Positions 5,817 through 43,500 of a stretch of 64,000 nt of DNA are shown piece by piece. The stretch's first letter is position 1. Each line of letters begins with the position of its first letter. The position numbers and the translations under genes are program-made. The DNA is from Narcine bancroftii (lineage: Eukaryota). Below the pieces are notes generated by a model, which was not told the DNA's origin, ran no database searches, and worked only from the letters and a program-made list of their open reading frames with translations. The stretch lies in NCBI RefSeq assembly GCF_036971445.1, contig NC_091476.1, forward strand, positions 97,960,001 to 98,024,000, in the 5' to 3' direction.

Positions 5817-7590
5817 TTAGTAGAGTTCGGGGGTCTTCCAAGACCACATGCTACTATTATCCATAAGAGCCTTTTTAACCAATTGTATCTCATCACAGGT
5901 AACTGGAGCAAGAGAAACTGGCTCGATAGGAGCAGCAGTGGGAGCAGAAGGCACAGTTGGGCCAGGAAGACTCAAGAGCTGGGGATGATGTTCCCATGCT
6001 TTTCTCTTATAAAGGGCATAAATGACTGCAGTAGGTTTCCCATCAATATCACTTTTAGGTACGCCTAACTTTAACAAGGTTAGAAAAAGGTCCCTTCTTG
6101 TCGGTCCGTTATTAGCAGCAGGCCCTCTCTTTTCATCCTGCTTGTCTGATTTAACCTGGGTTGTACGTGAGTGGATTTTACCTCCCAACTCTAATTCTCG
6201 AGGCCCAGATAAGGCATGCACCACCTCAGACACAGGGTGCCCAATTAACGGACTAGTTACGGACAGAACCAGTCCCCATACAGTGGGTTGGGCGGAACGA
6301 ACCAATCGGGTATGCATCCGGACGTGAATATCTCTTCATCAGGGCTCCCCCATGTACCCACAGCCTCAAACGCTCTGCATACAAGGCAGAGGCCAGGGCC
6401 TGTTGACGAATTACTGCCATACCCTCCTCTGGGGTGCCCCAATTGTTCTGCAAATGTAAATCCCAATCTACTGGTGATGGGTATACTCGTAGCAGGGCAT
6501 CCCCTAGAGTGGCAAGTAAGTAATCCACCTCTCTTCCTCTACCCCGCAGCTCAGCAGTGACCCGGATATCAGTAGTCAATGTTCCTAATCCCAACAATCC
6601 CTCAGGGGTTAAATATACATTACCCCCTCTTTGCTCCCAAACATGCAGGAGCCAAGCCGCAAGAGTTTCTCCTGCCTTTTGCCTAAATCGATCTCCAATG
6701 GCAGCCAGCTCTTTTATAGAGAAGTCACACATCATTGACTGCTCTTGACCTCTGCTCCCACTTTGGCCCACAGGGTCCTTTGCCCAGTGGACGGGACGAG
6801 GCCTAGGCCATCCCATAGAGGGGGTGGACCATTGAGCATAAGCAAGGGTTTGGGTACCTTCTCCTGGGTCCTCTAGTGAGATCAGGGGATCATCTACCTC
6901 TTCAATCTCATCAGTTACATTCCGCCCCTCTCCCTCTCTGTCTGTTTGGAAAATCTGCTGCCTTATAGGGCGGGTATGAACAGTGGGTGGAGAGGGTAGT
7001 ATGTTAGGCACATGCTGAGGAGTATCTGCATTATTACCATTGTCATCATTCCAGATATTCTCGTCCCAATCATCAATTACATCAGGATCGTCGCCATTCC
7101 TTATCATGGCACGAATACGATGTGGATCGGGTTCTACCCCTTGCTTTTCCTTATCTGCACAGAGCTGCTGCCAGAGTTTAAAATTATGGCAAATCATTTG
7201 GACATGCTTATCCGCCCATTCTTTGGCTCGGTCCTCACTGGTGCAAACAATCTCGCTCATCATGGAACAGTGTTGTCGCATGGCTTCTATCTCCTCCTCT
7301 AGTTGCTCTCTCTTGTGCTGGGATTCTACTTCTTGCTGTACAGATTCTGCTTCACGCTGAACGATGTGGTGCAAGGCTGTGGCCAGCAGCCAAAAACCAT
7401 CCATCAGTGTCCCCTTCTTAACAGGAAATTGACTTTCTCGAAGGAGATTGGCAACCCGAGGTGCACTTGATGGATCTAACCTCTCATCCCAACTAATGGG
7501 TGGTCCCAACAAAGACAGAGTATTGGCCAACATGCCAAACCCATCATCTTTGGAAGTCCATCCCGGAATCAAGAACTGCTCAGGGCTCAC
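5817..7590 (-). pseudogene. gag: ERV gag (ERV-L/Fv1-like capsid), split by a frameshift near 6253-6317
   Basis: 445-aa ORF with a coiled-coil and FSIKELAAIGDRFRQKAGETLAAWLLHVWEQRGG, which resembles ERV-L gag; continues in ORF 5817-6317 (TRRDLFLTLLKLGVPKSDIDGKPT). Confidence 0.85.
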
Positions 7591-7641: not shown

Positions 7642-8280
7642 TGTCTTGGGTAAACTTATTCCTCTCATTTTGATCGTTTTAGATTGGTCACAGTGTTTGA
7701 GCTACCGAAAGAAAATAGACACACACACCGAGAGCAGTTCAGTTTATACAAGGCTTTATTACTAAAGCTAAAGCTGAATTCACTCTACAATATGCAAACC
7801 CTTCCCAATTATACTTATCAACGCCTGGACTGGTCCCAACTGCCGAAGCGAGGCAATGATTGCACACTTGCAGTAGGTTGTCTGGGCGCCGGTAGCAACT
7901 TCTCCACCTCTCCCGACCGGGATGTTGGTTGGAGTCTAGAAGTTCTTCTTGCTGAGAGATGTTGCCACCTCTTAGAGAGTCTCAAACTTCAGCAGTGGGA
8001 CCATGGCTTATATTACCCAAAAATTGTTTACTCATAGCTTATCTCTTTGAATAAATGATTTAATTATCTTCAAGGTCTCCTGACAGTCAGAGACACTGGA
8101 TCTCTGGGCCTCATGGTGGAAATTAGATTATGTCTTTCTATTCAACTGCATCCCTGAGCCCCATGGTGGAATTTAGATTATGTCTTCTGATGCAATTGCA
8201 TCCCTTGTTGCATAAGCTGGTCTAAATCCTCCATTACATAGCTGTATAAGGATTACTGTGTTTCTTCCATTTATTCCTTG
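7642..8280 (-). repeat. 5' LTR of the ERV (U3 boundary uncertain)
   Basis: Ends in CA next to the PBS. Minus-strand AATAAA at about 7755-7760, TATA-like ATATAAG at about 8007-8013, and a roughly 49-bp tandem repeat at 8112-8207 (U3 enhancer-like). Confidence 0.6.
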
Positions 8281-8288
8281 GATATAAT

Positions 8289-11200
8289 TGTGGTGATATG
8301 TAATTACACCACTAGGTCACCAAGGTTCATCCCGGTGACCTTGTATATAAAGCAGTCCAGAGCTAAAGTCTAGCCTTCTAGGTTCATCTTACAGAGAAAC
8401 AAGATATCTTAGTGTGCATATTAGTTTATTAAAGCTGCCTTATACTTGCACTGCTGGTGTGGTTATTGTCAGTAAAATTTAATAAATTAATATGATAGCT
8501 ACTAGGATAGAAGCTGCTTCTGCTCCAATGCACATTCCTGACCACCTGGAGACTCTTCCTGAGGAATGAAATCCGGAGACAATCAGCACGCACATGCATC
8601 GGAGGTCAGAGACAGCAAGGGACCGCTGTACTAGAATCGTGGTGAAATGTGGGGAAGACCACAGAAGTACGATAGGGCAGGTAAGAAATGGCCAAGAGCC
8701 CTGCCTGCCCATGGGCTCACCAAAACAGGTGCTGCCAACCCTAAACCTCGGTCTGATCAGAAAGGGGCCACTACAAGCGCGGGTGGAAAGATCTCCACAA
8801 GTCGTCCTCCCGATCACCACGTATGTGCAGAATTCCTGACCACTCCAAGTCAAGGAAAGCAGACGTCGCTACCGTCACTCCCCCAGCAGTAGTTTCCCCA
8901 GTACCAATGCTACCACTGTGTTCTGCCTAAGCCACTGCAAATGTCCCAATGCCAGAGACCCAGCCAACAGCCCCATGCTCCCAGGTTACTCCTCCAGCAG
9001 ACACAAGCCCCACAGAGGCTTTACCAGCATCTCCCAGTATCCCAGGGTCCGCCCTTGCTACACCTAGATCCAGAGACCACATGGAGACCGGGAACAACCC
9101 CCAGGGTGCCCCCACGTTACCTAAGGGATCAGAGACTGCAACTTAGCCATGCACTGCGACCAGGCAGGCTGGAGCTTGACTTCAGAAATCCTGGAGCCGG
9201 CACGCACTTCAGCCTCTGGCGGAGATGCTTTCTGAATTACGTGGAGGGTGCTGAGGCATCGGATAAAGAGTTATTAATGCTGCTGTTAGCGCAGCTGGGA
9301 GACCACCCTTACTCCCTTATACAGGATGTCAGGTCCTACCAAGAGGCAATGAGCATTTTACAGAGGCATTACAGTAAGGGGCATAATGAACTCCACTCCC
9401 AGTACAGACTCATGACCAGGTCACAACAAGTGACCAGAGACTTTATACTCTCTCTGAAAGACCTGGCGAGAGGCTGCAACTTTAAAGCAGTATCAGCTCA
9501 GGAGTATGCGGAGGACTTTATTACAACAGAATTGTTGCGGGCATACGGTCCACTGAGACGAGATATCGATTGCTGGAGAAAGGAATGGTGGGGCTAGATG
9601 AGGCAGAGACTATCGCAGAAGCTTTAGAAAACACCAGGAAAGAATTGGAGGAGTACTCACAGGACCCTGGGGCTGGGACAAACGTCACACTGCTGGACTC
9701 TCTAGCCCCAGGAAAAGTATGCTGCCTCACAGGAATTCACAGCAGCAGCAGCACCTTGAGGGTCCCAAGTGCTTTTTCTGTGGACAAAGAAAGCACCCCA
9801 GAGCCCTCTGCCCTGCCAGAGAAAATGCCTGTTCCAACTGTGGAAAACGTGGGCATAATGCAAAAGTCTGCAGAAGCCCCAAGGCCACAGCCAAAATCCA
9901 TTCTCATGCCAATGAGAGGCAGGAAAGCTCTTCTTTCTCCACAGAAACAGAAGAAGAAGAATGCCATGTGCAACCAGCCATCTTGGACAAATGCTACAGA
10001 GCAGAGTAGTCTTCAGGAGATGAATATGATGCTGAGTACTATCGGATGGAAGGACACGAAGGACATGCCAGACTTGCTTCCCTATGCATGAATCAGGCGA
10101 GTCCACACAATTTATCTGATGCCACTGTGTGCAACAAAATTAATGATGTGAGGGTAAATTGCTTAATAGATAGTGGAAGCACTGAAAGTTTCATTGACCA
10201 GGGGTTAGTCAACTGCCTTGCCCTCCCCACACGCCCGAGTGAGCACTGGATCCTGTTAGCAGCCAGCACCCTTGCGGCTGAGGTAAAACAGTTTTGCAGG
10301 ATTACTCTAGAAATCCAGGGCACAAAATACAAAGGGTACAAATTACGAGTACTCCCTCACATCTGTGCCCTGGTACTATTGGGGTTAGATTTTCAGTGTC
10401 AGTTAGAAAACATTACAATAGTGCACAACGGGCCTCACCCCCCACTACGCCTTACGAAGAAACAACACTGCAGCCTGTCTGTCCTGAACATAGAACCCCT
10501 TCCACTGTTCACACACCTGACCCCAGAATGCACACCAATAGCCACAAAGAGCAGGAGGTGCAGTCTTCATTAGGACAGAGGTCCGCATGCTACTACAGGA
10601 GAACATCATAGAGCAGAGCACCAGCCCCTGTAGAGCCCAGGTGGTTGTAGTCAAGTCAGGAGAAAAACTGCGCATGGTAGTGGATTACAGCCAGACAATC
10701 AACAAATTTACACGACTAGATGCCTACCCCCTGTCATGCATAGCAGACATGGTCAACAACATTGCGCAGTATAAGGTGTTCTCCACCATAGACCTGCAGG
10801 CAGCATACCACCAACCGCCCATTAGAAACAGCGATCGCATTTACACGGCATTTGAGGCAGATGGCAGGCTGCATCAATTTATGTGACTCCCCTTCCGTGT
10901 TACCAGTGGAGTGTCCCTGTTTCAGAGAGAAATGGACTGAATAGTAGATGAGCTCCAACTGAAAACGGTGTTCCCCTACTTCGACAACGTGACAATCTGT
11001 GGCCACATTCAGGAGGATCATGACACGAATTTAAAACGCTTCTTCCAGGCAGCCGAGGAAAGGAACCTAACATACAACAGGGATAAATGCGTCTTTAGCG
11101 CCAGGAAGTTGCCAATCCTGGTCTACATAGTGCAGAACGTGGAAATCAGCCCAGACCCAGCCCATATGCGCCCTCTCCTAGACCTCCCAGTGCCACACAC

Positions 11201-28500: not shown

Positions 28501-31500
28501 TCTCCACGATTTATTGTGTGAATCCAACCAGGATCTATTCTTGGAAAATAATTAGAAATAGTCCCAGACAGCTTTTACCCTCTATTTCAATTGAATTATG
28601 ACTTGGTAAAGCCATATTTATTTAGATCCATTAGCTCAGTAAAGAGGAAAATTTGATTTGAGAGCTTTGCAGTAGATTCAGTTAAATACCATGCCATCTT
28701 AATGAGCCAAACTATTCAAGAGAATAACTGCAAAATAAAACTTTTTGTAAAGATCAAAAGAAACATAGAGACATGTCATGAAGAAAACATTAAAAAATAT
28801 TCATCTGAACTGTATTATGAACAAATTATCATTGAAATTCTTTCAAACTGTAAATTCTTGCCTGCATCATTCCAAGGCATGCTGCCTCTTAACTGAAGGA
28901 ACAGGTTTCATAGATCTACCATTCCACCTGTACCTACCTATAACCTCTTTTCTGTTAGCTTGTGCTAACCCTTGTGACATTTTTACTCAGGTGTCTGTTT
29001 GATTTTTTGAAACTCTTGATGAAGGGTTCAAGTCCTGAAATGTCATCGGCCTGTTCCTTCCTATGGATGTTGTTTGACCTGCTGAGTTTCTCCAGCACTT
29101 TTATATACTGTCAGGAGATCTTAATGATCTTTAATCAAAATGCTCCATATTTACCACTTACAAGCATGAACTCTGCGTATTAATTTGTATTAATATGTTT
29201 CCCCCATAATGAGATTGATCGATTCTTGTTTAGCCAGGGGATCAAATGTTATGTGAAAAAGGCAAGGTCTAAGTGGGAAAATGGATCAGCTCATGGTTAA
29301 ATGTCAGAGCAGACTCAATGGGCTGAATAGCCTATTTCTGCTCCTTTTCCTCTTGGCCTTATGGTCTTTTTTCTTGTTATTGAAATAATGAAATTTCTGA
29401 GGAGGTGTCAGAAATGCAGTCTTTAAATTCTGAGGCTGGACCTCCGTGCCCACAGATTTTCATGTAAATTGAGAAGTCCCACTTTACACACAAAGGACAT
29501 TGTTTATAAAAATTGCTAAAGTTACCTTCCACTATGCTATTATGATAAAGCAAGCTTGACTATATATAGCTAGTTAATACTATCATGTGGCAAGAATGAA
29601 AAGAAATTGTTAGAGAAATTGTACTAAACCTTTTTTGCCATTTCTGTAAATACCCTTAGTAATCTTAAAACAACATTTATTGCTCATGACCAATAATATG
29701 CAAACTACATCCTTGGAGAAAATGACATGAAAATTTAACAGAATGGCAGCGGACTCCTAGGTTAAACTTATGCAAAGAGGTTAAACAAACTAGTATTAAT
29801 TCATTCAAATTGCAAACGTTTATGGGTTGACTTTGGTTTTGAAGATATTGAGGGGAATTCAAAATAGAGTTTACAAAGAACATTGCAATCGATCAGTGAG
29901 TTGAACAGGAAGTATGTGGTCTTAAATTTTGACACAATGTCATTTGATTTATTAATTGCAATTTGATTTTGTTTTAGAAGTCCCCATATTTGAAGTTTTT
30001 CAACATTGTTTATAAAACTGTTTCAACATAAATTAGCTTTTTGAGAATCCCCGTAATACTTTGAATCTCTCATTATGATGGAATTACCTTCATGTGCATC
30101 ATGTAGGGTTAAGCATCTAAAATAGCACAAGTTACCTCCATTTAAATTTAGCACCATGGCACATTGAGGCAGATGTTGGACAAAAGTGGATCTTATGAAA
30201 TATCTCAAAAAAGTAGAGAGAAATAAGTCTAGCAGAAGTGCTTTCAAAATTCAGGTGACTAAAGTCGAGATTGTCATTGATGGAATAATTAAAATATTCT
30301 GCCCTATTCAGATTTCATGTATGTCAGTGTAAATACATGACATCACATACAACCCTGAGATTCCTTTTTCCCGTGGGCATGGCAGAATTACTTCTCATTG
30401 GTAGTGCAGAAAATAAACTGTTCACAGCATGAACATGTAAACAAATAAAAGAACTGTAAACACATAACGAATGTAAAGAAAATGTGCAATACAGAGAGAA
30501 CAAAAGAAAATCAATAAAGTGCAGAAGTAAGAGTCCTTAATTGAGTCTTTGATTGAGTTTGTTGTTGAGGAGTATGATGGAGGAGGGGGAGCAGCTGTTC
30601 CTGAACCTGGTGTTGCGAGTCTTGTGGCACCTATACCTCTTTCCCGATGGCGCCAACAAGAACAGAGCGTGTGTTGGGTGGTGTAGGTCTTTGATGATTG
30701 CTGTTGTCCTCTGACAGCAGTGTTTCCTGTGGATATACTCAAAAGTAGGGAGGATTTTGCCTTTAATGTTCAGGGTTGTGTCCACTACCTTTTGGGGGGG
30801 CTTTATGCTCAGGGGTATTGATGTTCCCGTACCTGTCCTTGATGCAGGCGGTCAGCACACTTTCCACCACATATCTGTAGAAATTTGCCAGGGTTTTTGG
30901 TGTCGTACCAAACCTCCACAAACTCCTGAGGAAGTAAAGGCGCTGATGTGCTTTCTTCATGATGCCATTGGTGTGTTGGGTCCAGTAAAAATCTTCTGAG
31001 ATAGTGACTCCCAAGAACCTAAATGGGCTCACCCTGTCCCCCTCTGATCCCCCAATGATCACTGGATTTTATACTTTTGGCTTTCCTTTCCTGAAGTTAA
31101 CAATCAGCTCCTTAGTTTTGGTGACATTGAATGCAATGTTGTTGTTGGTGCATTTTTCAGTCAAGTTTTCAATCTCCCTCCTGTATGCTAACTCATTCCC
31201 TTCCTTTATACAACTCACTACCGTGGTGTGATCGGCAAATTTGTAGATGTACCGAGCCACGCAGAGTAGGTGTAAAGTGAGTACAGAGCAGTGGGCTAAG
31301 AACAAAGCCCTGAGGTGCTCAGGTACTGATGGAGATGGTGGAGGAGCTGTTCTCACCAATCTTCACTGATTGTGGTGTGGAGGTGAGGAAATCCATGATC
31401 CAATTACGCAGTGGGGTGTTAACTCCCGGGTCTTGGAGTTTGATGATCAGTTTTGAGGGGATGAAGGTGTTAAATGTCAAACTGTAGTCGATAAAGTGCA

Positions 31501-34500
31501 TCCTGATGTATGCATCTTTGCTGCTCAGGTGTTCCAGGGCTTTGTGTAGAGCCAGTGAGAAGACATCTGCTGTAAACTTGTGTGATAGTACAGATCTATC
31601 ACCAATGTACATAGTGTATATAGTTACTGTATCTAGACTGTGCTTACAGCGATTGGCTGAGAGCTAAGCCACACCTATTGTTTGGGCCTTAAAGGGTTGT
31701 GTCCCTAGCCAGGTCGGATCATTCCGGACTGGTCGGCCACCTGTGAAGAGCTCCGGTCTTTTGCTAATAAAAGCCTTGGTTTGGATCAACAAGTCTTTGG
31801 TTCTTTCGACGAGCTCTACAATTTTATTAGCAAAAAGAATTTTTTTTGAAAGGGATGGAGCGTTTAACTCGGCCAGAAAAACTTGATATCGACCCACAGT
31901 CAGCTACAGCCTTCAAAGCCTTTAAGTTCTGGCTGCTGAACTTTGAAAACTTCCTGAGATTCATTCAGGTAGAGGAGGATAACCAGCGTCTAACAGCATT
32001 GCTGTCTATGGTGTCCTTGAGAGTCTACGAGAACATCCAGGATGAGACCACTTACACCGCAGCCATAAAGGTACAGAAGGAACTGTATGATCAACCGGTG
32101 AACAGAGTTCATGCCCGGCTCATGCTTGCGTCGAGGAAGCAACAGCCCGGCGAGTCCAGCAGGGCATATTTACAAGTATTAAAGGCATTGGGCAAGGACT
32201 GTAACTGTGTGGACAAAACTGCTGCCGAGATCACTAGCGACCTCGTCCGGGATGCCTATGTGGCCGGGCTCCGGTCGAACGAAGTGAGGCTGCGTTTGCT
32301 CGAGCAAGGGGTAGAAAAACTAGAGGACGTGGCCCGGATTGCAATCACAATGGAGGATGCAGCCTTAAAGTCCACCGAGCTCTCTAGGGACTGGACCCCT
32401 CGTTCTGATGTGAGTAGAGTGCCCTTCTACCCTACCCCTGACGGCCTTTCGGCTGCTGCTACCCTGCCCCGTGCGAACCCGAAATGTTATTTCTGCGGGA
32501 GGGACAAGCACAGCAGATCCCAGTGCCCAGCAAGAAAAGCCAGGTGCCAGAAGTGCCTTAAAAAGGGCCACTTTGCTGCAGTCTGTAGGTCTAAAATGGC
32601 CGCCAGCAAACACAGTGCCTCGTGTGAAGCTCAACCGCCACTATCCCATTCAAACTCTTCTTCCCCAGAGCTCTCGTCCAATGAGAGCGAGGGCTCCCCT
32701 GCACGGCAACGCCTGACGTCACGGAGACGCCGAACCCGGAAGGGGCAACCCACCGTCGCAACCATGGTGATGGCCTGCCTCTCGCCCCCGTGCGGAACAC
32801 TTGACACTACCGCCGCTGCTGCCGCTGCTGCCGCCGCCACAGCCACCCCCGGGGCCGACGCTGCCGCCGCTGCTGCCGCCGCCACGGACACCCCCGGGTC
32901 CGACGCTGCCGCCGCTGCTGCCGCCGCCACAGCCACCCCCGGGGCCGACGCTACCGCCGCTGCTGCCGCCGCCGCCACGGACACCCCCGGGGCCGACGCT
33001 ACAGCCGCTGCTGCCGCCGCCACGGACACCTCCGGGGCCGACGCTACAGCCGCTGCTGCCACGCATCACGGATGTGGTGAACCAGATCGCCCAGTACCGC
33101 ATTTTCTCCACTATTGACCTACGTTCGGCCTACCACCAGCTCCCGATCCGCTGCGAAGACCGACCATTCACGGCCTTTGAAGCGAATGGGCGGCTATATC
33201 AATTTCTCAGGGTACCATTCGGGGTCACAAATGGTGTCGCGGTCTTCCAGCGGGAAATGGACAGGATGGTGGACCAGAACGGGCTAACCGCTACCTTCCC
33301 GTATCTGGACAATATCACCATCTGCCGCCACGACATGCAGGACCATGAACCAACCTAGACAAATTTCTTCAACTGCCCGTCAGCTAAACCTGACTTACAA
33401 TTTGGACAAGTGTGTTTTCCGGACCACACGACTCGCTATTCTAGGTTGTGTGGTGGAAAACGGGATAGTCATGCCAGATCCTGACCGCATGCGTCCCTTA
33501 ATGGACTTACCCCCCCCACATACCCAGAAAGCTCTCAAACGCTGCCTGGGCCTTTTCTCGTATTATGCCCAATGGGTTCCAAACTACGCCGACAAGGCAC
33601 GTCCTCTTATCAAGACCACCTCTTTTCCCCTCTCGACCGAAGCCACAGCGGCTTTCGATCGAATCAAATCTGACATCGCTGCTGCGACGCTGCACGCGAT
33701 CGATGAGTCTGTCCCGTTTCAAGTCGAGAGCGATGCATCCGACTTCGCCCTGGCAGCCACCTTGAACCAGGCCGGTCGGCCTGTAGCCTTCTTCTCCAGA
33801 ACCCTCCAGGGTCCGGAGAGTAGACACTCCTCGATCGAGAAGGAGGCCCAGGCCATAGTTGAAGCGGTACGTCGTTGGAGACATTACCTTGCTGGGAGGC
33901 GCTTTACACTGTTGACTGATCAACGCGCGGTCTCCTTCATGTTCAGCAACACCCAGCGTGGTAAGATAAAAAACGACAAAATTGCCAGATGGAGAATCGA
34001 ACTCTCCACCTTTAACTATGACATCCTGTACCGGCCTGGTAAGCTCAACGACCCGCCTGACGCGCTCTCCAGGGGGACGTGCGCCAGCATACAGATGGAC
34101 AGACTACGGAAACTCCATGAGGCGCTCTGTCATCCAGGGGTCACTAGGTTTGCTCACTTTGTCAAGGCGCGCAACTTACCCTACACAGTTGAGGAGATCC
34201 GCTCCATGACCCGAGCCTGTTCGGTGTGCGCCGAATGCAAGCCCCACTTCTTCCGTCCGGATAACTCCCACATCATCAAAGCCACCCGCCCCTTCGAGCG
34301 TCTTAGCGTAGACTTTAAGGGACCCCTACCGTCGACCAACTGTAATACCTACATCCTTACGGCCATCGACGAATACTCCCGCTTCCCATTCGCTGTGGCC
34401 TGCCCAGACACCACTGCCACCTCAGTGATACAGGCCCTTCACAGTATTTTCACCATCTTCGGGTACCCCAATTCCATCCACAGTGATAGGGGGTCCTCAT

Positions 34501-37500
34501 TCATGAGTGCAGAGCTGCAACAGTACCTTCTGGAGTGTGGTATTGCTTCAAGCAGGACCACGAGCTATAACCCACGCGGTAATGGCCAGGTCGAGAGGGA
34601 GAATGCCACCATATGGAGAGCGGTTACACTGGCTCTCCGGTCTAAAGGTCTCCCCACCTCTCACTGGCAGGAGGTTCTCACTAGTGCCTTACACTCCATC
34701 CGCTCCCTCCTATGTACTGCAACAAATGCCACCCCCCACGAAAGGATGTTCCTTTTCCCGAGGAAATCCGAATCGGGAACCACTGTACCGGCATGGCTCA
34801 CCGTCCCTGGCCCTGTCCTTTTGCGACGCCACGTCCGGCACTCAAAGAACGACCCCTTGGTCGACCGAGTGACTCTACTCCACGCGAACCCACATTACGC
34901 ATACGTGGAGTTCCCAGACGGGCGGGAGGACACTGTTTCGGTGCGGGACCTAGTTCAGGACGCGGTAGACCCAGCAAACCCCCCAACTCCTTATGCTCCA
35001 GGCCCCGTGCCGCAACAGAAGGACCAACAGCACCCCAATGACTCGGGCCACCCTGCCGACAAAACGACTGGGGAATTGAGCGACGGAGCAGTCGCACCCG
35101 ATGAGCCCGCTGGCGACACCACTCCAGCGACCCCAATCCCGGCACCACGGCGGTCACGCCGGATGGTCAGACCCCCTGACCGCTACAGTCCTTGACCTAC
35201 CCCTTCCTTTTCATTCTCTCCCTCGTTTTTGTTTTTTTTTCCAGGGTCAATTCTCCAAGAAGGGGTGAATGTGATAGTACAGATCTATCACCAATGTACA
35301 TAGTGTATATAGTTACTGTATCTAGACTGTGCTTACAGCGATTGGCTGAGAGCTAAGCCACACCTATTGTTTGGGCCTTAAAGGGTTGTGTCCCTAGCCA
35401 GGTCGGATCATTCCGGACTGGTCGGCCACCTGTGAAGAGCTCCGGTCTTTTGCTAATAAAAGCCTTGGTTTGGATCAACAAGTCTTTGGTTCTTTCGACG
35501 AGCTCTACAACTTGTTACTATGATGGGTACCACTCAGTCAGGAGCTGATCTGCTCCATCACCAGCCTTTCAAAACACTTCATCACAGTTGATGTAAGTGC
35601 TACTGTTCGATGGTCATTAAAGCAGATTTCTACACTCTTCTTGGGCACTGGTATGATTGATGCCTATTTGAAACAGGTGTTCAAAGGCCAGAACTGAAGA
35701 GATGTTCAAAGCAAACTTACTTTCAGCACTGTTTAATATTGAAAGAAGCAACATTTTTTAAACATCTATTATCGGTTTCATTAAAGATAATCACAGCTTT
35801 TAAACCTTTGGGTATGATTGAAGCAGTCTGCATCCAAAGTATTTGATGACCATATTCTAATTGGAATACTGAGTCAGAATGTAAAGTGAATTGATAGGTT
35901 GGCTTTTAGCAGAAGTGGAATCTTTCAACAAACAGTTAAGTGCCTTAAGGCAGAGCTAAAATGTGAGTAATAAAGTCTGATTAGTGAAGCAGAAGAAGAG
36001 TTACCCAATCTCAAACTGGTTTAGAAATAGGAGATACCTGTGAATGTCGTTACAATTGCAGCACAGAAGGCATGGCAGCCGTTTTATAATGCAGCAGGGT
36101 CCCACAAAGAGAAATATGATATAAAAACATACAATGCTGGGAAAAGTCTACAGGTTCAGGCAGCATCTTTGAGGAGTGAAAAGGAGTTAACAGCTCAGAA
36201 AGAAGCAATGTGGTAATGGCCATATATATTGTATTTGTTTGTGGTGAATGAAGAACAAATATCGTCGTGACCAAAGCAAAGTCATGGTAAATCCATTTTG
36301 GGGCCAAAAAAAAGTTGAAATGTAAAACTTTGTCTGAAGGATAGCATATCATAAAATTATGCATTTTCTTGATATTGCACTGAAGTGTCAGCCGAGCCTT
36401 TGGGCGTGAAGTTTCTGGGCATCCGTCTGACTCAGTGTGCCCAATCAATCCATGGTGATGGTTTCATTCGAGAAAGCAAAGGACAACCAGTGATAATTGT
36501 CTAATAATTACAATTTATAATGAAGGATTGAAATTTGAGATTGTTGGATTTTAAGTTATGTTTTTTTTCCAGATCCAGTTAATGTAACCACTGAGATGAG
36601 GTAAGAACTCTATTTTACTTTGGCCATTATAATTTTATGCAAATATTTTCATACTGACATTTAACGTGTACATTTTACTAATGTGTTTATAATATGCTGT
36701 ATGTTGAATTATATTTGTTGAATTTGATTAGTATATTTCACATTCCATCTGATCATTCAAATGCTAATTTCTATAATTTTGAGGACCCAAAATTCAACTG
36801 AAGTGCTGTGACTATATATGAAAATGACTGCAAAGAATCCTGAGAATCTTATGAAGATAATCTAGGGTGTCAGCAGTGAAGGAGGTGTTGGCAGTCTTAG
36901 ATGGTGTCAATGTGGATAAATCTCTAGATCCAGGCAGGAACTCCCAGGAAATTGGGGGAAGACAAGAAGGACACTTTTAAAAATATTTTCATAGATTCGC
37001 AAAATTCAAACAAACAGTATAATCTTTCAACATTTGTACAATATACAGAGTCGATGTTTATTTCCCCCTCACCTCCCACCCCAACCCCACCCTCAACCTA
37101 CTGAAAAAACGGTCAATTAAATTGTACAAGTATAAATTCTGTGGGGTCATAGACCCTTACAGAAACCTAGGAAAAAACATCCACAATGGCTAAATAACAA
37201 AGACTAAAAAAAAATTAAAAGGGGAAAAAAAACAAAACTAAACTAAAAAAACCATGTTGTCTGCGCTATCTTCAACTTTCTTGGTCACTTTTGTTTCCCT
37301 GCTAGGACGGATTGCTATCGTACCCCTATTTCAAAGTGGAGGTGGGGGGGCTAATCAATCTGTGTGCCAATATATTTCAAATAAGGTTGCCACACCTTAA
37401 CAAATGTGTCGTGTTTCTTGCTTAGATTGTATGTGATTTTCTCCAGGGGAATGCAATTCTGCATTGCCATATTCCATCATATGGTCTATAGTTGGGAGTC

Positions 37501-40500
37501 AGACTTTCACGAAACCTCCATACACTTCCGCCAATGCAATCTTCAAGAGCGGAAATTGTTCTTTGCTCAATCTAAAACTCACATCCCCAGTATCTCCTGC
37601 AAGGTACAACACCAGATCCTGTGGACAATCCACTTTTGTAATTTTTTTCAGGATATCCTCCAGGTCTTCCCAGACATAGCCAGGTGGAGTGGACAAAAGT
37701 TCCAACCTCCACTTGACATCTAAAGAATCTTTCTAAAATTGCAGGCTTTGATTTGTGTATTTTTTGTGGTGTGAGGTACAACTGGTGTAATAAATTGTAC
37801 TGCACCAACCTGTTTCTGGCATTGACGACCTTGAGGTGCCCAAGTCCGACTCAAATCTCTCCCTCAACCTGACACTGTTAAAACCTTGACAAACATTTTT
37901 AATTCTTCACTGAACTCGCGAGACATTTCAGAAGAATGCAAATATGATGCCATTAATGAAAAAGTCTGTAAAGATAATTCGAGTAGCTATACTCCTTTTA
38001 GTCTGACATCAGTGGTGTGGAGTGGATTCTAAAAGATAGAGTCTATGAGCATTTGGATGGCTAGGAGAAAATTAAGGTGAGGCAGCATGAATTTATGTGG
38101 GAATGTCTCACAAACTTGATAGAACATTTTGAAAATGTGTCAAGCAGGATAAGTAGATGAGGGCAAGGCAATTGATGTTATTTAGTTGGATTTTAGAAAT
38201 GCATTTCATAAGTTGGTGAAGAAGGTGAGAGCACATGGGATAAGAGGCCAACTAGTCACCTTGACAAACAATTGGCTTAGTAATAGGAGTTAGAGAGAGG
38301 ATCTAGATAGCAGCTTTTCAGACTGAAGGGCCTTGACTAGTGGAGTACCTCAGGGTTTGGTTTGAGGACTCTTGCTTTTGATTTTATATATGTATATATA
38401 ACATGTACTTATCACAGCCGGTGCAGACGGCCGTGCCCAAGCGCCAGGGCCGGCTGCCAAAGCGACAAGACATGTAGCCGGTTCTGGGGGGGGGGGGGAG
38501 GTTGTATGGTGGCGCACATCGTCATGGCATACCGGCCCACTTGTATCGCCGCGTGGTGGGGCAGCCATGGGGAAATGGGGTTGTCAGAGGTTTCTCTCTG
38601 ACTCCAGTATCCCTTCTAGCAGGCGCCCTGGGCAGTGTTATGATGTCACAATGCACCAGGTGCCCTTAAAGGGGCGCACTGAATTGGAATAAAAACAGTC
38701 ATTAACAACCATCGGTGTGGTAGCAGTGATTTCCTTCAGCTCCTGCAATCGCCACAGTGGTGACCCTGATGGGCCCAGACGTCTATCTGGACCCAGTGAA
38801 CGATGGACGCAGCCGAGGTGAGCACAGTAGCCATCAAACATCCCCCTTCTGGCCCCACTGCACACAGACATGGTTCGGGCAGGCGGAGGCACAATTCTAC
38901 CTCCGCAACATCTCAGCCGACGCCACAAAATTTTACCTCGTCGTGGACGCGCTGGACCAGGACACGGTGGCGATGGTGAATGACATCATTCACAGGCCAC
39001 CAGGAGTTGGCAAGTATACCGCCATCAAAAATCTACTCCTGGGGAAGTTTGGCCTCATGCCACAGCAGCATCCTTCCAGGCTCTTACGCCTGGATGGGTT
39101 GGGAGATTGCAGCCCCTCAGCCCTATGGACAAAATGTTGGCCCTGACGGAGGATCATGAACCGTGTTTCCTCTTCCTCCAGATATTTCTTGAACAGATGC
39201 CAAAAGATACCCGGCTTAATCTGTCCGAAGAGGCCTTTCCCGACCCCCGCAAGGCCGCAGCCTCTGTCACACAAAACAGTAGAATGAGGCAGCCCTACGC
39301 CAAGTCTCCAAGCCGGGGCCCCGCCATCCACAGGATACCACCAAGCACAAGCTGGAGGAAACTCAGTCAACACAGTGCTTTTATCACCAGCACTGGGGAG
39401 TGAAAGCCTGCATCATGCCCCCTCTTTTCACGCTGATTGCGATGAAAGAGAAGATTCTGGCTTGGTCGGAGGAGGCAGACGAGGCCTTCCCTCCAATGAA
39501 ACAGGCCCTCACAGAGGCAACTTTGTTGGTGCACCCTCTCCCGGCAGTGCACACGGCACTCTCGGTCGATGCTTCCGCCACAGCGGTCGGGGGAATACTG
39601 GAACAGTGGCTGGACAGGCAGTGGTGCCCGCTAGCCTTTTTCAGTAGGCATTTGCGGCCGCTGGTGCTTAAATACAGTGCGTTCGATGGGGAGCTCCTGG
39701 CGCTGTACCTGGCCATCCGCCACTTACGATACTTCTTGGAGGGCAGAACTTACACCGTTTTTACCGATCATAAGCCCCTCACCCAAGCACTGGCTATGGC
39801 CAAGGACCCGTGGTGGCCCAGGCAACAGCGCCATCTGTCCTACCTGTCCGAATTCATGGCAGACATCCGGCAGAGGGAGGGCAAGGACAATGTGGTCGTG
39901 GATGCTCTCTCTCGTCCGGCCTCAGCACGCTAGCTCCCGGCCTCGACTATGGACAACTAGCGCAGGTCCAGCAGCACGATGCCGAAACTCAGGTCTCCAG
40001 CTCGAGGATATCCATCTTCTTGACTCCACCCAGCCTCTACTCTGCGACACTTCCACCGGCTCACCATGCCTGGTAGTCCCACAAGAGTGGAGTGCGAGGG
40101 TCGTCAGCTCTATCCACAATCTCGCCCACCCCTCAGTAAAAACTATCATGCATATGGTGGCACATCGATTCGTCTGGCATGTCCTCAAGAAGGAGATGGC
40201 AGCGCTAACCCACAACTGCATCAGGTACCAGATGTCTAAAGTCCACAGGCACATGCCAGCCCCTGTTCAACATTTCAACTTGGCAACACAGAGGTTCCAC
40301 CATATCCACGTGGATGTTGTGGGCCCCTTGCAGGTGTCCAGGGAGTTGCGGTACCTGTTTACCATAGTGGATGGAGCAACCAGGTGGCCGGAAGCCATCC
40401 CGGTCCGTGAGGCGTCAGCGGAGATGTGTGCTAGAGCCTTGGTCAGCTAGTGGATCTCTTGTTTCAGCGTGTCGGTGCACATCACGAGTGACAGATGCGC

Positions 40501-43500
40501 CTAATTTCCCACTATGGTCGCAGCTGGCAAAGCTTTTTGGGGTAACACTGCACCACACGATGGCCTACCACCCACAGTCCAATGAGTGAGTAGAGAGGTT
40601 CCACCGACTCCTAAAGTCTGCTCTGATAGCAAGACTTTCCGGCCCCGACTGGGTGGACGAGTTGCCTTAGGTTCTCCTTGGAATTAGGATGGCGCACAAG
40701 GAGGACCTGCAAGCCTCATCAACAGAAATGGTTTACGGCGTGCCACTCTCCCTGCCAGGTGAATTCTTCACACCGGAGGCCGAAACGACACACAGCGAAG
40801 GTGATCAGCTCGCGGACCTCCGTAAACGACTGGGCAACCTCACCCTGCTGCCCCCATCACACTACGGCACCCCACCATCCCATCAACGGAAAGATCTGGC
40901 TGAGGCGCAATTTGTGTTCGTCCGGAGAGGACCACAGAGAGCCCTGCTGCGGCAGTTTCTTCAATCTGAGGCGCCTGCAAGCTCACACCAAGACACAAGA
41001 GCAACTTGTCCGTGAACTACTCTTTGCAGACGATGCCGCTTTAGTTGCCCATTCAGAGCTAGCTCTTCAGCGCTTGACGTCCTGTTTTGCGGAAACTGGC
41101 AAAATGTTTGGCTTGGAAGTCAGCCTGAAGAAAACTGAGGTCCTCCATCAGCCAGCTCCCCACCATGACTACCAGCCCCCCCCACATCTCCATCGGGCAC
41201 ACAAAACTCAAAACGGTCAACCAGTTTACCTATCTCGGCTGCACTATTTCATCGGATGCAAGGATTGACAATGAGATAGGCAACAGACTCGCCAAGGCAA
41301 ATAGCGCCTTTGGAAGACTACACAAAAGAGTCTGGAAAAACAACCAACTGAAAAACCTCACAAAGATTAGCGTATACAGAGCCGTTGTCATACCCACACT
41401 CCTGTTCGGCTCCGAATCATGGGTCCTCTACCGGCATCACCTACAGCTCCTAGAACGCTTCCATCAGCGTTGTCTCCGCTCCATCTTCAACATTCATTGG
41501 AGCGACTTCATCTCCAACATCGAAGTACTCGAGATGGCAGAGGCCGACAGCATCAAATCCACACTGCTGAAGATCCAACTGTGCTGGGTAGGTCACGTCT
41601 CCAGAATGGAGGACCATTGCCTTACCAAGATCGTGTTATATGGCGAGCTCTCCACTGGCCACCGAGACAGAGGTGCACCAAAGAAGAGGTACAAGGACTG
41701 CCTAAAGAAAGCTCTTGGTGCCTGCCCCATTGACCACCGCCAGTGGGCTGATCTCGCCTCCAACCGTGCATCTTGGCGCCTCACAGTTCGCCGGGCAGCA
41801 ACCTCCTTTGAAGAAGACCACAGAGCCCGCCTCACTGACAAAGGACAAAGGAGGAAAAACCCAGCACCCAACCTCAACCAACCAATTTTCCCCTGCAACC
41901 ATTGCAACTGTGTCTGCCTGTCCCGCTTCGGACTTGTCAGCTACAAACGAGCTTGCAGCTGACGTGGACATTTACCCCTCCATAAATCTTCGTCCGCGAA
42001 GCCAAGCCAAAGAAAAGAGAAGGGGGGCAGGGAAGAATTGTTTACTGTGGACCACTTAAACGCTGCTTATTTACTTATCACAGCCAGTGCAGATGGCCGT
42101 GCCCAAGCACCGGGGCCAGCAGCCAAAGCAATAGGATGCGTAGCTGGTTCTGGGGGGCGGGGTTGTGTGGCGGCACACATCCTCATGGCAAACCGACCCC
42201 GCTTGTATTGCCACGTGGCGGGGCAGCCATGGGGAAATGGCATCGTCAGAGTTTTCTCTCTGACTCCAACATCCCTTCCAGCGCCTGCCCTGGGCAGCAA
42301 TTACGATGTCACAATGCACCAGGTGACTGAGCTCATGCTGCCCTTAAAGGGGCGCGCTGAATTTGAATAGAAACAGTCGTCAATGACCTTCGGTGTGGCA
42401 GCAGTGATTTCCTTCAGCTTCTGCAAGCACCACAGTATATTAATTTGTGGAAATGTAAGTTTGATTATGACATGAAAAGATATGCAGCAGTGGACAGAGA
42501 AGAAGGTTACCTGGTTTGCAACATTCCAAATCAATCAGTGAATGTAAGTGTTCAATGTTTGACAGGACAATTTAAAAGTAATAAAATTATATTTAAAATA
42601 AATATATACTGAAATTAATGGGCTCTTTGACTTAAATTGCCAGAGATTTCATTTTGAGTAAAGTAGTCAGTGAAATCTGGACCATTAGTTTCTAAAAATA
42701 ATTTTAAATTAATTAAGATTATAGATGAAATAATTATGGTTAAAAGGTTTGCTTTGTTGTATGATGACCACACAAGACGACAGAATTAATTTTTCATTGT
42801 GACAATGAATAAGAAGACCTGCAAAACTATATGGATCTTGAAACACTAAAGTATGTTCATGAACTAAAACATCATCCTTTTTTTAAAAAACTTGGATTCA
42901 GGATTCCACACTGAAGGACATTTGAGCAGATCAGGAGGTGCTGGTATATTAATCCCTGGCTCTTTATAATCTAGCTCAACGCAGGAAACTGTTAACAAAA
43001 CTATATAAATCATAGACATTAATCTTCGTCCGCGAAGCCAAGCCAAAGAAAAAGATAAATCATAGGAGTAAAGCCAACTGTTTAATTAAAATCACTTTCA
43101 AATTAAAATTTCTGATGTGTAATGATTGTATTAACAAGTACAAATGGGGCAGCTTAAAAATAGCTGTGGTCATGATAACAATGTGGTTATACCCATTGAT
43201 GTTAAACATAAGTCTCATCAACAACCCTGCAAAAGTTTCAGTCGCTTCTTGTCTGCAGAAAGTTCCTCAGTGAATCCCACAATTTTGCTTTCTGTTGATA
43301 AATTTTCTCCAGATTGATTAGATTAAGAGTGAACCTCTGGTTTGGTAAATATCAGTTTATCTAATTTCTTAACTCGTATTTTGTAAAATTGGCATAAAAT
43401 AATGTTTGCAATTACCTACAGCATCAACTTAGTGGATGCCATCACAGGGAAATTACCACCCAAGATACTGGAAATACTCAGCAGGCAGCATCTGTGAATT

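What the first reader, a model, noticed from the sequence alone, without database searches (positions are those of the whole stretch)
31757..31838. Gypsy lineage with no tRNA PBS: the PBS position is complementary to the element's own LTR poly(A) signal (candidate self-priming system)
Seen: after the 5' LTR end (CA, 31820) and one spacer A, 31822-31835 reads TTTTATTAGCAAAA. This is the perfect reverse complement of 31759-31772 (TTTTGCTAATAAAA), which contains the AATAAA signal. There is no TGG-initiated tRNA PBS. Element G1 shows the same geometry with a dissimilar LTR (next finding). Established: fission-yeast Tf1 self-primes using the extreme 5' end of its RNA. Inference: here the pairing arm lies about 40 nt downstream of the TATA-predicted start and coincides with the poly(A) signal, so the mechanism may differ. 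The R region (5' or 3' copy), cleaved just after AAUAAA, could act as the minus-strand primer. The hairpin could also mask the 5' LTR poly(A) site.
Basis: partly seen in the sequence, partly recalled or inferred. Interest (0 to 1): 0.85.

Follow-up and report, generated by a model that had tools for sequence, protein, structure and literature searches.

The report
Self-priming site in a shark retrotransposon
A jumping gene in this cartilaginous-fish genome lacks the usual tRNA primer site and instead has a site that pairs with its own terminal repeat; relatives from sharks to marine invertebrates keep this pairing through matching changes on both sides, so the whole lineage probably primes its own copying as yeast Tf1 does.

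Summary
Element G2 has identical 240-nt LTRs (31581-31820 and 35270-35509) and a 5-bp target duplication, ACTTG. One base after the 5' LTR, 31822-31835 is a perfect 14-nt complement of 31759-31772, which contains AATAAA.

The pairing is not chance. G1 in this window and about ten invertebrate-associated relatives from metagenomes show the same anatomy with different arm sequences. Of 17 pairs, 13 change on both sides. Cells paired are 88.6% against 71.6% in shuffles (0 of 500 reach it).

Best reading: Tf1-type self-priming in a Ty3/gypsy clade without a chromodomain. The clade is probably Mag-like and carries the RT motif YLDNxTICG. It lies outside the Tf1/sushi group, where self-priming is known.

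The overlap with the poly(A) signal holds in about half of the lineages, not all. What is constant is an arm ending in UAAA followed by RCCU.

The transcription start is unresolved. No RNA data could be used, so an arm lying inside the transcript or a primer made by poly(A) cleavage is not supported.

First readers noted the same signature on four other pieces of this genome.

Novelty: new member of a known kind. Interest is moderate.

The parts
31576..31580 (+). Left copy of the 5-bp target-site duplication ACTTG
   Evidence: same pentamer at 35510-35514
31581..31820 (+). 5' LTR of G2 (240 nt, TG..CA)
   Evidence: identical to 35270-35509; many different flanks begin at 31581 in public contigs
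31689..31725 (+). TATA-like TTAAAGG (31689-31695) and Inr-like TCATTCC (31719-31725); predicted, not shown, transcription start near 31721
   Evidence: read; inference only
31759..31772 (+). Arm A, the proposed self-primer TTTTGCTAATAAAA; AATAAA at 31766-31771; followed by the conserved GCCT at 31773-31776
31773..31821 (+). 49-nt loop: rest of R, U5 and the single spacer A (31821). This would be the template of the predicted minus-strand strong-stop DNA
   Evidence: the model is inferred
31822..31835 (+). Arm B, the primer-binding site TTTTATTAGCAAAA, one base after the LTR
31855..32765 (+). gag (ATG at 31855; two CCHC knuckles)
   Evidence: gag start is conserved in relatives
32766..33105 (+). 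Ala-rich tandem repeat in place of protease and the N-terminal half of RT. G2 is an internally deleted, non-autonomous copy
   Evidence: a loose end at 33056 shows other copies carry RT sequence there
33060..35195 (+). RT remnant (motif C is YLDN), RNase H and integrase; no chromodomain
35257..35269 (+). Polypurine tract AAGAAGGGGTGAA abutting the 3' LTR
   Evidence: conserved GGGG(T)GAA in relatives
35270..35509 (+). 3' LTR of G2; copy of arm A at 35448-35461
35510..35514 (+). Right copy of the target-site duplication ACTTG
8417..8433 (+). G1 arm A, CATATTAGTTTATTAAA, ending in ATTAAA
8478..8494 (+). G1 arm B, the PBS slot TTTAATAAATTAATATG. G1 is an old, frameshifted copy with no detectable 3' LTR

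Best explanation
G2 is a young, internally deleted copy of a Ty3/gypsy retrotransposon. Its clade starts minus-strand DNA synthesis with a piece of its own RNA instead of a tRNA.

Proposed steps in the genomic RNA (inferred, not shown):
1. Arm A in R of the 5' LTR (31759-31772) folds back onto the site one base past the LTR (31822-31835).
2. By analogy with Tf1, the element's RNase H cuts at the 3' end of arm A, at the conserved UAAA|RCCU junction.
3. The freed 3'-OH is extended through the spacer, U5 and the rest of R. In G2 this gives about 49 nt of strong-stop DNA.
4. That DNA transfers to the 3' R.
5. Plus-strand strong-stop synthesis then copies the primer and rewrites the PBS from arm A in each cycle. 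This would explain why young copies pair perfectly although the arm sequences differ between lineages.

Where arm A ends in AAUAAA or AUUAAA, the same duplex exists only at the 5' end of the RNA. It may therefore also mask the 5' poly(A) signal.

Shown: the anatomy, its conservation and the covariation. Inferred: the cleavage, the priming and the masking.
For: - The 14/14 complement sits exactly at the PBS slot, and the element otherwise has a normal LTR, target duplication and polypurine tract.
- The same anatomy appears in G1 and in about ten metagenome lineages sharing 42-62% identity with the G2 RNase H-integrase ORF. Their arm sequences differ: for example L004 has 17/17, L002 14/14, L003 13/13, L025 13/13 and L040 13/13.
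- Covariation: 13 of 17 pairs change on both sides. 88.6% of cells are paired against 71.6% in shuffles (0 of 500 reach it). Slid registers give 29-50%.
- RNAalifold independently predicts the 13-bp helix.
- Copies with 100% or 99% identical LTRs pair perfectly. Older copies carry mismatches (L030, L010, L059, G1).
- No Rfam family matches the region and the window holds no tRNA gene.
- Self-priming with this layout is established for Tf1 and predicted for its relatives.
Against: - There is no RNA or cDNA evidence. The start site, the poly(A) site, the cut and the primer are all unobserved. The only public runs holding the element are contigs of unknown kind.
- TATA/Inr-like motifs in G1 and G2 would put the start about 40 nt upstream of arm A, unlike Tf1.
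- The clade lacks the chromodomain of the Tf1/sushi group, so the mechanism cannot be carried over by homology.
- No significant Tf1-like three-duplex 'pretzel' fold was found.
Confidence: 0.75

Rival explanations
1. The duplex serves only to hide the 5' LTR poly(A) signal, in the way the HIV-1 poly(A) hairpin does, and some other RNA primes reverse transcription.
For: Arm A ends in AAUAAA or AUUAAA in G2, G1, the L004 group, L040, L058 and L059. Arm B exists only downstream of the 5' LTR, so only the 5' copy of the signal would be masked.
Against: In every lineage arm B sits exactly one base after the LTR's CA, which is the primer slot. No alternative PBS is visible. In L001, L002, L003, L025 and L010 the arm is not a canonical signal, and L002, L025 and L003 carry their canonical hexamer unpaired in the loop.
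Confidence: 0.1
2. The duplex is a packaging, dimerisation or translation-control structure in the 5' leader and has nothing to do with priming.
For: Conserved leader helices with covariation are common in retroelements. gag starts only 8-30 nt after arm B.
Against: This does not explain the fixed register at the U5 boundary, the missing tRNA PBS, or the perfect arms in young copies that fit re-copying of the PBS from the primer.
Confidence: 0.08
3. A cellular RNA, such as a tRNA fragment or small RNA, is the primer and the match to the LTR is incidental.
For: Some copia elements use internal tRNA fragments. Host small RNAs could not be searched here.
Against: The PBS sequence differs between lineages and tracks each lineage's own LTR. 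No site starts with TGG. There was no Rfam hit.
Confidence: 0.03
4. The match is a chance product of A/T-rich, low-complexity sequence.
For: The arms are A/T-rich. One of 20,000 shuffles reached 14 nt.
Against: The pattern is replicated in about 11 lineages with G/C-containing variable cores and compensatory changes.
Confidence: 0.01

Closest known systems
Tf1/Tf2 of Schizosaccharomyces pombe (self-priming shown by experiment) and other fission-yeast relatives (Tj1, Tosmo1-3, Tcry1)
   Same: No tRNA PBS. The site just after the 5' LTR's CA pairs with a stretch of the same LTR upstream. The model is an RNase H cut at the end of the duplex followed by extension through U5.
   Different: In Tf1 the primer is the first 11 nt of the mRNA, a three-duplex 'pretzel' is required, and the integrase has a chromodomain. 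Here the arms are 13-17 nt and always end in UAAA followed by RCCU. They often contain the poly(A) hexamer. The start site is unknown, no pretzel was found, and there is no chromodomain.
Vertebrate Tf1/sushi-group elements such as sushi-ichi (Butler et al. 2001, as cited)
   Same: Vertebrate Ty3/gypsy elements predicted to self-prime.
   Different: Those are chromoviruses. G1, G2 and their 120 best relatives carry no chromodomain. They have RT motif C YLDNxTICG and short LTRs of 150-240 nt.
Mag lineage of Ty3/gypsy (A, B and C clades; SURL, Jule, Mag)
   Same: Metazoan-wide and including vertebrates. Compact elements of 4-5 kb with short LTRs. The LTR termini resemble the published Mag C motifs, TGTNATRT...AYANAACA.
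   Different: Mag-lineage elements described in mosquitoes have tRNA-Leu or tRNA-Ser primer sites. Placement of G1 and G2 in this lineage was not tested by a tree, because no reference sequences were available.
Predicted self-priming in plant Tcn1-like chromoviruses and TAR Ty1/copia elements (Neumann et al. 2019)
   Same: Self-priming inferred from complementarity between the LTR and the PBS slot in lineages without a tRNA PBS.
   Different: Different superfamily or clade and different hosts. No link to a poly(A) hexamer is reported in the passages read.
HIV-1 5' poly(A) hairpin (own knowledge)
   Same: RNA structure over the AAUAAA in the 5' R can suppress premature polyadenylation.
   Different: The HIV hairpin is local and is present at both ends. 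Here the partner strand is the PBS, which exists only at the 5' end.

Membership tests
Ty3/gypsy (Metaviridae) LTR retrotransposon | LTRs with TG..CA ends, 4-6 bp target duplication, polypurine tract, pol order PR-RT-RH-IN | tested here: met
   PR is deleted in G2 but present in G1 and in relatives.
Self-primed LTR retrotransposon (functional class, Tf1 type) | No tRNA-complementary PBS; the site abutting the 5' LTR is complementary to the element's own LTR | tested here: met
Self-primed LTR retrotransposon (functional class, Tf1 type) | Complementarity maintained among diverged relatives by compensatory change | tested here: met
Self-primed LTR retrotransposon (functional class, Tf1 type) | The primer arm is the extreme 5' end of the mRNA | not testable with these tools
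   No RNA reads: the runs are contigs of unknown kind. Promoter-like motifs suggest an offset of about 40 nt in G1 and G2, which is inference only.
Self-primed LTR retrotransposon (functional class, Tf1 type) | RNase H-dependent cut at the 3' end of the duplex, and the primer found on strong-stop DNA | not testable with these tools
   Needs experiment
Self-primed LTR retrotransposon (functional class, Tf1 type) | Three-duplex 'pretzel' around the primer/PBS helix | tested here: inconclusive
   There is only a short ACCU..AGGU hairpin next to the arm in invertebrate members, and fold energies do not differ from shuffles.
Tf1/sushi group (chromoviruses) | Chromodomain at the integrase C-terminus | tested here: not met
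   One search found no chromo domain in G2. None of the 120 relatives lists one.
Tf1/sushi group (chromoviruses) | Placement within the group on an RT/RH/IN tree with reference elements | not tested
Mag lineage, C clade (SURL-like) | LTR of about 170 nt with termini TGTNATRT...AYANAACA (Benachenhou et al. 2013) | tested here: inconclusive
   G2 has TGTGATAG...GCTCTACA. L001-L003, L025 and L010 end in ..ACAACA or ..TAACA. LTRs are 150-240 nt. This is a resemblance only.
Mag lineage, C clade (SURL-like) | Placement on an RT/RH tree with SURL, Jule and Mag | not tested
   No reference sequences available

The most novel reading that the evidence does not exclude
The primer arm lies inside R, about 40 nt from the cap. 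One 13-17-nt element ending in the poly(A) hexamer then does two jobs. Paired with the PBS at the 5' end, it hides the poly(A) signal and is cut out, by two cuts or by a processing step different from Tf1's, to prime reverse transcription. Unpaired at the 3' end, it directs polyadenylation. This would go with an RT whose catalytic motif is YLDN instead of YxDD.
Probability: 0.2. Interest if true: 0.75.

Novelty: new member of a known kind. Interest (0 to 1): 0.58.

Why it matters
Self-priming has been treated as a peculiarity of the Tf1/sushi chromoviruses and of a few plant lineages. Here the same signature, backed by covariation, marks a large metazoan clade without a chromodomain that reaches from invertebrate-associated metagenome contigs to elasmobranchs. 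Three things follow:
- tRNA-based PBS finders will fail to find a primer site for, or will mis-annotate, these abundant elements.
- Host defences that target tRNA-type primer sites would not see them.
- The clade's constant UAAA|RCCU junction, its frequent overlap with the poly(A) hexamer and its YLDN RT motif give concrete handles for testing how self-priming works outside yeast.

Tried and rejected
Full-length copies from Hypanus, Scyliorhinus and Mobula genomes could therefore not be fetched for close-range covariation.
- RNA evidence: the look-up of sequencing runs found no run on record as RNA. Read laying on X1-X4 gave only short contigs. They show no starts or ends, apart from one weak A-rich loose end after 35472.
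- No metagenome contig ends in a poly(A) run. The 127-nt '3' LTRs' of L001 and L003 look like assembly overlaps (my inference), not transcript ends.
- Folding 31720-31860 alone is not more stable than shuffles, z = -0.82. The loops alone are not significant either. The support comes from comparison, not from energy.
- MAFFT cannot align the G1 and G2 LTRs. They are different families with 57% protein identity.
- Rfam and the tRNA scan of the window found nothing.
- A 21-nt perfect inverted repeat in L041, L045, L054 and L056 has a different position and anatomy, so it was set aside.
- Literature: eight full-text searches found self-priming only for Tf1/sushi, plant Tcn1 and TAR, and Tj1. 'YLDN' gave no paper. 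Springer 1991 (SURL) and Lin & Levin 1997 (RNA) are not held. A prior description in old papers, GyDB or Repbase cannot be excluded.
- Clade assignment by a tree was not possible without reference sequences.

Full report
**Observation.** The window holds a 3.9-kb LTR element, G2.
- Its LTRs are identical and 240 nt long, at 31581-31820 and 35270-35509 (TG..CA).
- It has a 5-bp target duplication, ACTTG, and a polypurine tract at 35257-35269.
- One base after the 5' LTR, 31822-31835 is the exact reverse complement of 31759-31772, and that stretch holds AATAAA.
- The 14-mer occurs nowhere else in the 64 kb except in the 3' LTR copy.
- Shuffling gave a complement this long at the PBS slot once in 20,000 trials; the analytic expectation is about 7e-6.
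- Public contigs laid on the region show many different flanks starting at 31581 and after 35506-35510. The LTR bins are 10-30 times deeper than the interior. The boundaries are therefore right and the family is multi-copy.

**What G2 is.**
- gag starts at 31855 and has two CCHC knuckles.
- An Ala-rich tandem repeat (32766-33105) replaces protease and the N-terminal half of RT.
- An RT remnant, RNase H and integrase follow.
- A loose end at 33056 shows that other copies carry RT sequence there.
- G2 is thus a recently inserted, non-autonomous deletion derivative. It sits inside a LINE-like RT fragment on the minus strand (the LINE reading is mine and had no Pfam support).
- Its best protein relatives are from elasmobranchs (Hypanus, Scyliorhinus, Mobula; 64-78% identity), followed by crinoid, cnidarian and mollusc proteins at about 50-58%.
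- None of the 120 best relatives lists a chromodomain, and G2 has none.

**Replication in the window.** G1 shares 57% protein identity with G2 and its LTR cannot be aligned to G2's. It has 17-nt arms at 8417-8433 and 8478-8494, with 16 Watson-Crick pairs and one G:U. The upstream arm ends in ATTAAA. G1 is old: it is frameshifted and has no detectable 3' LTR.

**Replication outside the window.** A metagenome scan returned 66 related loci. Wherever the 5' LTR region was present and not badly decayed, the anatomy was the same:
- The LTR ends in ..ACA and is followed by a spacer A.
- An arm beginning UUUA follows. It is complementary to an LTR stretch ending in ..UAAA, which is itself followed by RCCU.
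- The loop between the arms is 33-66 nt, and gag starts 8-30 nt further on.
- The variable cores differ between lineages. Examples are L004 ATTTCTAGTCGAATAAA (17/17), L002 TTTAGCTAGTTAAA, L001 TTTAGTTAGTTAAA, L003 TGAGTCGTTTAAA, L025 TTAGTTGGTTAAA, L040 CTGCTTGAATAAA and L058 CCTTAGTGAATTAAA.

**Covariation.** This was measured on a 15-row alignment.
- 13 of 17 pairs change on both sides.
- 88.6% of cells pair, against 71.6% in shuffles (0 of 500 reach it).
- Sliding the register drops pairing to 29-50%.
- RNAalifold finds the same 13-bp helix on its own.
- Copies whose LTRs are 99-100% identical pair perfectly. Copies with 92-96% identical LTRs, and G1, carry one or two mismatches.

**Mechanism.** The helix is locked to the primer slot and no tRNA-type site exists. 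The slot's sequence tracks each lineage's own LTR rather than any conserved cellular RNA. Rfam and tRNA scans found nothing. The best explanation is self-priming as shown for Tf1: the arm folds onto the PBS, RNase H cuts at the end of the duplex, and the 3'-OH is extended through U5.
- For G2 this predicts a 49-nt strong-stop DNA (31821 to 31773), with transfer through the part of R that lies after the arm.
- Plus-strand strong-stop synthesis copies the primer, so the PBS is rewritten from arm A in every cycle. This would explain perfect pairing in young copies despite divergence between lineages.
- These steps are inferred.

**The poly(A) overlap.**
- The arm ends in AAUAAA or AUUAAA in G2, G1, the L004 group, L040, L058 and L059.
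- It ends in GUUAAA, UUUAAA or AUGAAA in L001, L002, L025, L003 and L010. L002 and L025 (AAUAAA) and L003 (AUUAAA) carry a canonical hexamer in the loop.
- The constant feature is therefore UAAA|RCCU, not the signal itself.
- Masking of the 5' signal by the PBS arm is a plausible secondary role in some lineages. It is not the common denominator.

**The start site.** TATA-like and Inr-like motifs would place the start about 40 nt upstream of the arm in G2 (near 31721) and G1. In invertebrate members the distance from TATA-like motifs to the arm varies between 45 and 80 nt (read), so motif reading is not reliable here. An internal arm would leave a 5' tail on the primer. Plus-strand synthesis would copy that tail and so hinder the second transfer. 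That favours a start at or near the arm, but no RNA data could settle it.

**Comparison with what is known.**
- Self-priming is established for Tf1/Tf2. It is predicted for the Tf1/sushi chromoviruses (including vertebrate sushi elements), for plant Tcn1-like elements and for TAR copia elements.
- G1, G2 and their relatives fail the chromodomain test.
- They share an RT motif C of YLDN(I/V)TICG: 55 of 65 relatives carrying the motif have YxDN, as do all the loci with the hairpin.
- LTR size and termini resemble the published Mag C (SURL-like) profile. Described Mag-lineage elements from mosquitoes use tRNA-Leu or tRNA-Ser.
- I found no paper describing self-priming in this clade. The key older papers and the curated TE databases were out of reach.
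- First readers noted the same signature on four other pieces of this genome. Those are leads, not independent evidence.

**Verdict.** The feature is real, conserved and very probably functional. It is a new lineage using a known kind of mechanism. The more exotic reading, an internal arm with priming coupled to the poly(A) signal, remains open but unsupported.

Noticed in passing
window 33296-33322; relatives P0001-P0120; loci L001-L059: RT motif C reads YLDN(I/V)TICG instead of YxDD. 55 of 65 relatives carrying the motif have YxDN and 10 have YxDD. Every locus with the self-priming hairpin has YLDN. This is unusual for an active RT, because the second Asp is a catalytic residue in other RTs.
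   Followed up: partly
window 31773-31776 and loci (alignment A1 columns 34-37): RCCU directly after the primer arm is nearly invariant across phyla. In L001-L004 it opens a small ACCU..AGGU hairpin. It may be part of what the cutting enzyme recognises.
   Followed up: partly
window 32766-33105: An in-frame Ala-rich tandem repeat with a roughly 45-nt unit sits at the deletion junction of G2, where protease and the N-terminal half of RT are missing.
   Followed up: partly
window 31069-31580 and 35515-35650, minus strand: G2 is nested in what reads as a LINE-like reverse-transcriptase fragment. The host ORF is split by the insertion. Pfam gave no hit for the 97-aa ORF, so the reading rests on the sequence alone.
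   Followed up: no
window 38403-42436: Direct repeats of about 360 nt, 84-88% identical and 3.67 kb apart, flank ORFs that include an integrase (H2C2 and rve domains at 39677-40450). This is probably another, older LTR element.
   Followed up: no
window 8095-8194: Two tandem 50-nt units (82% identical) lie just upstream of the G1 LTR/PBS region.
   Followed up: no
window 6253-7590, minus strand: A 445-aa ORF with no Pfam match lies next to G1.
   Followed up: no
L041:8568-8684, L045:1241-1357, L054:2494-2610, L056:8568-8684: An identical 21-nt perfect inverted repeat with a 75-nt loop lies about 1.3 kb upstream of the RNase H-integrase match in a more distant subfamily. Its anatomy differs from the PBS hairpin.
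   Followed up: no
window 35454 (run X3): Five contigs diverge just upstream of 35454, inside arm A. This suggests a subfamily in the same genome with a different arm core. Whether its PBS changes to match could not be checked.
   Followed up: no
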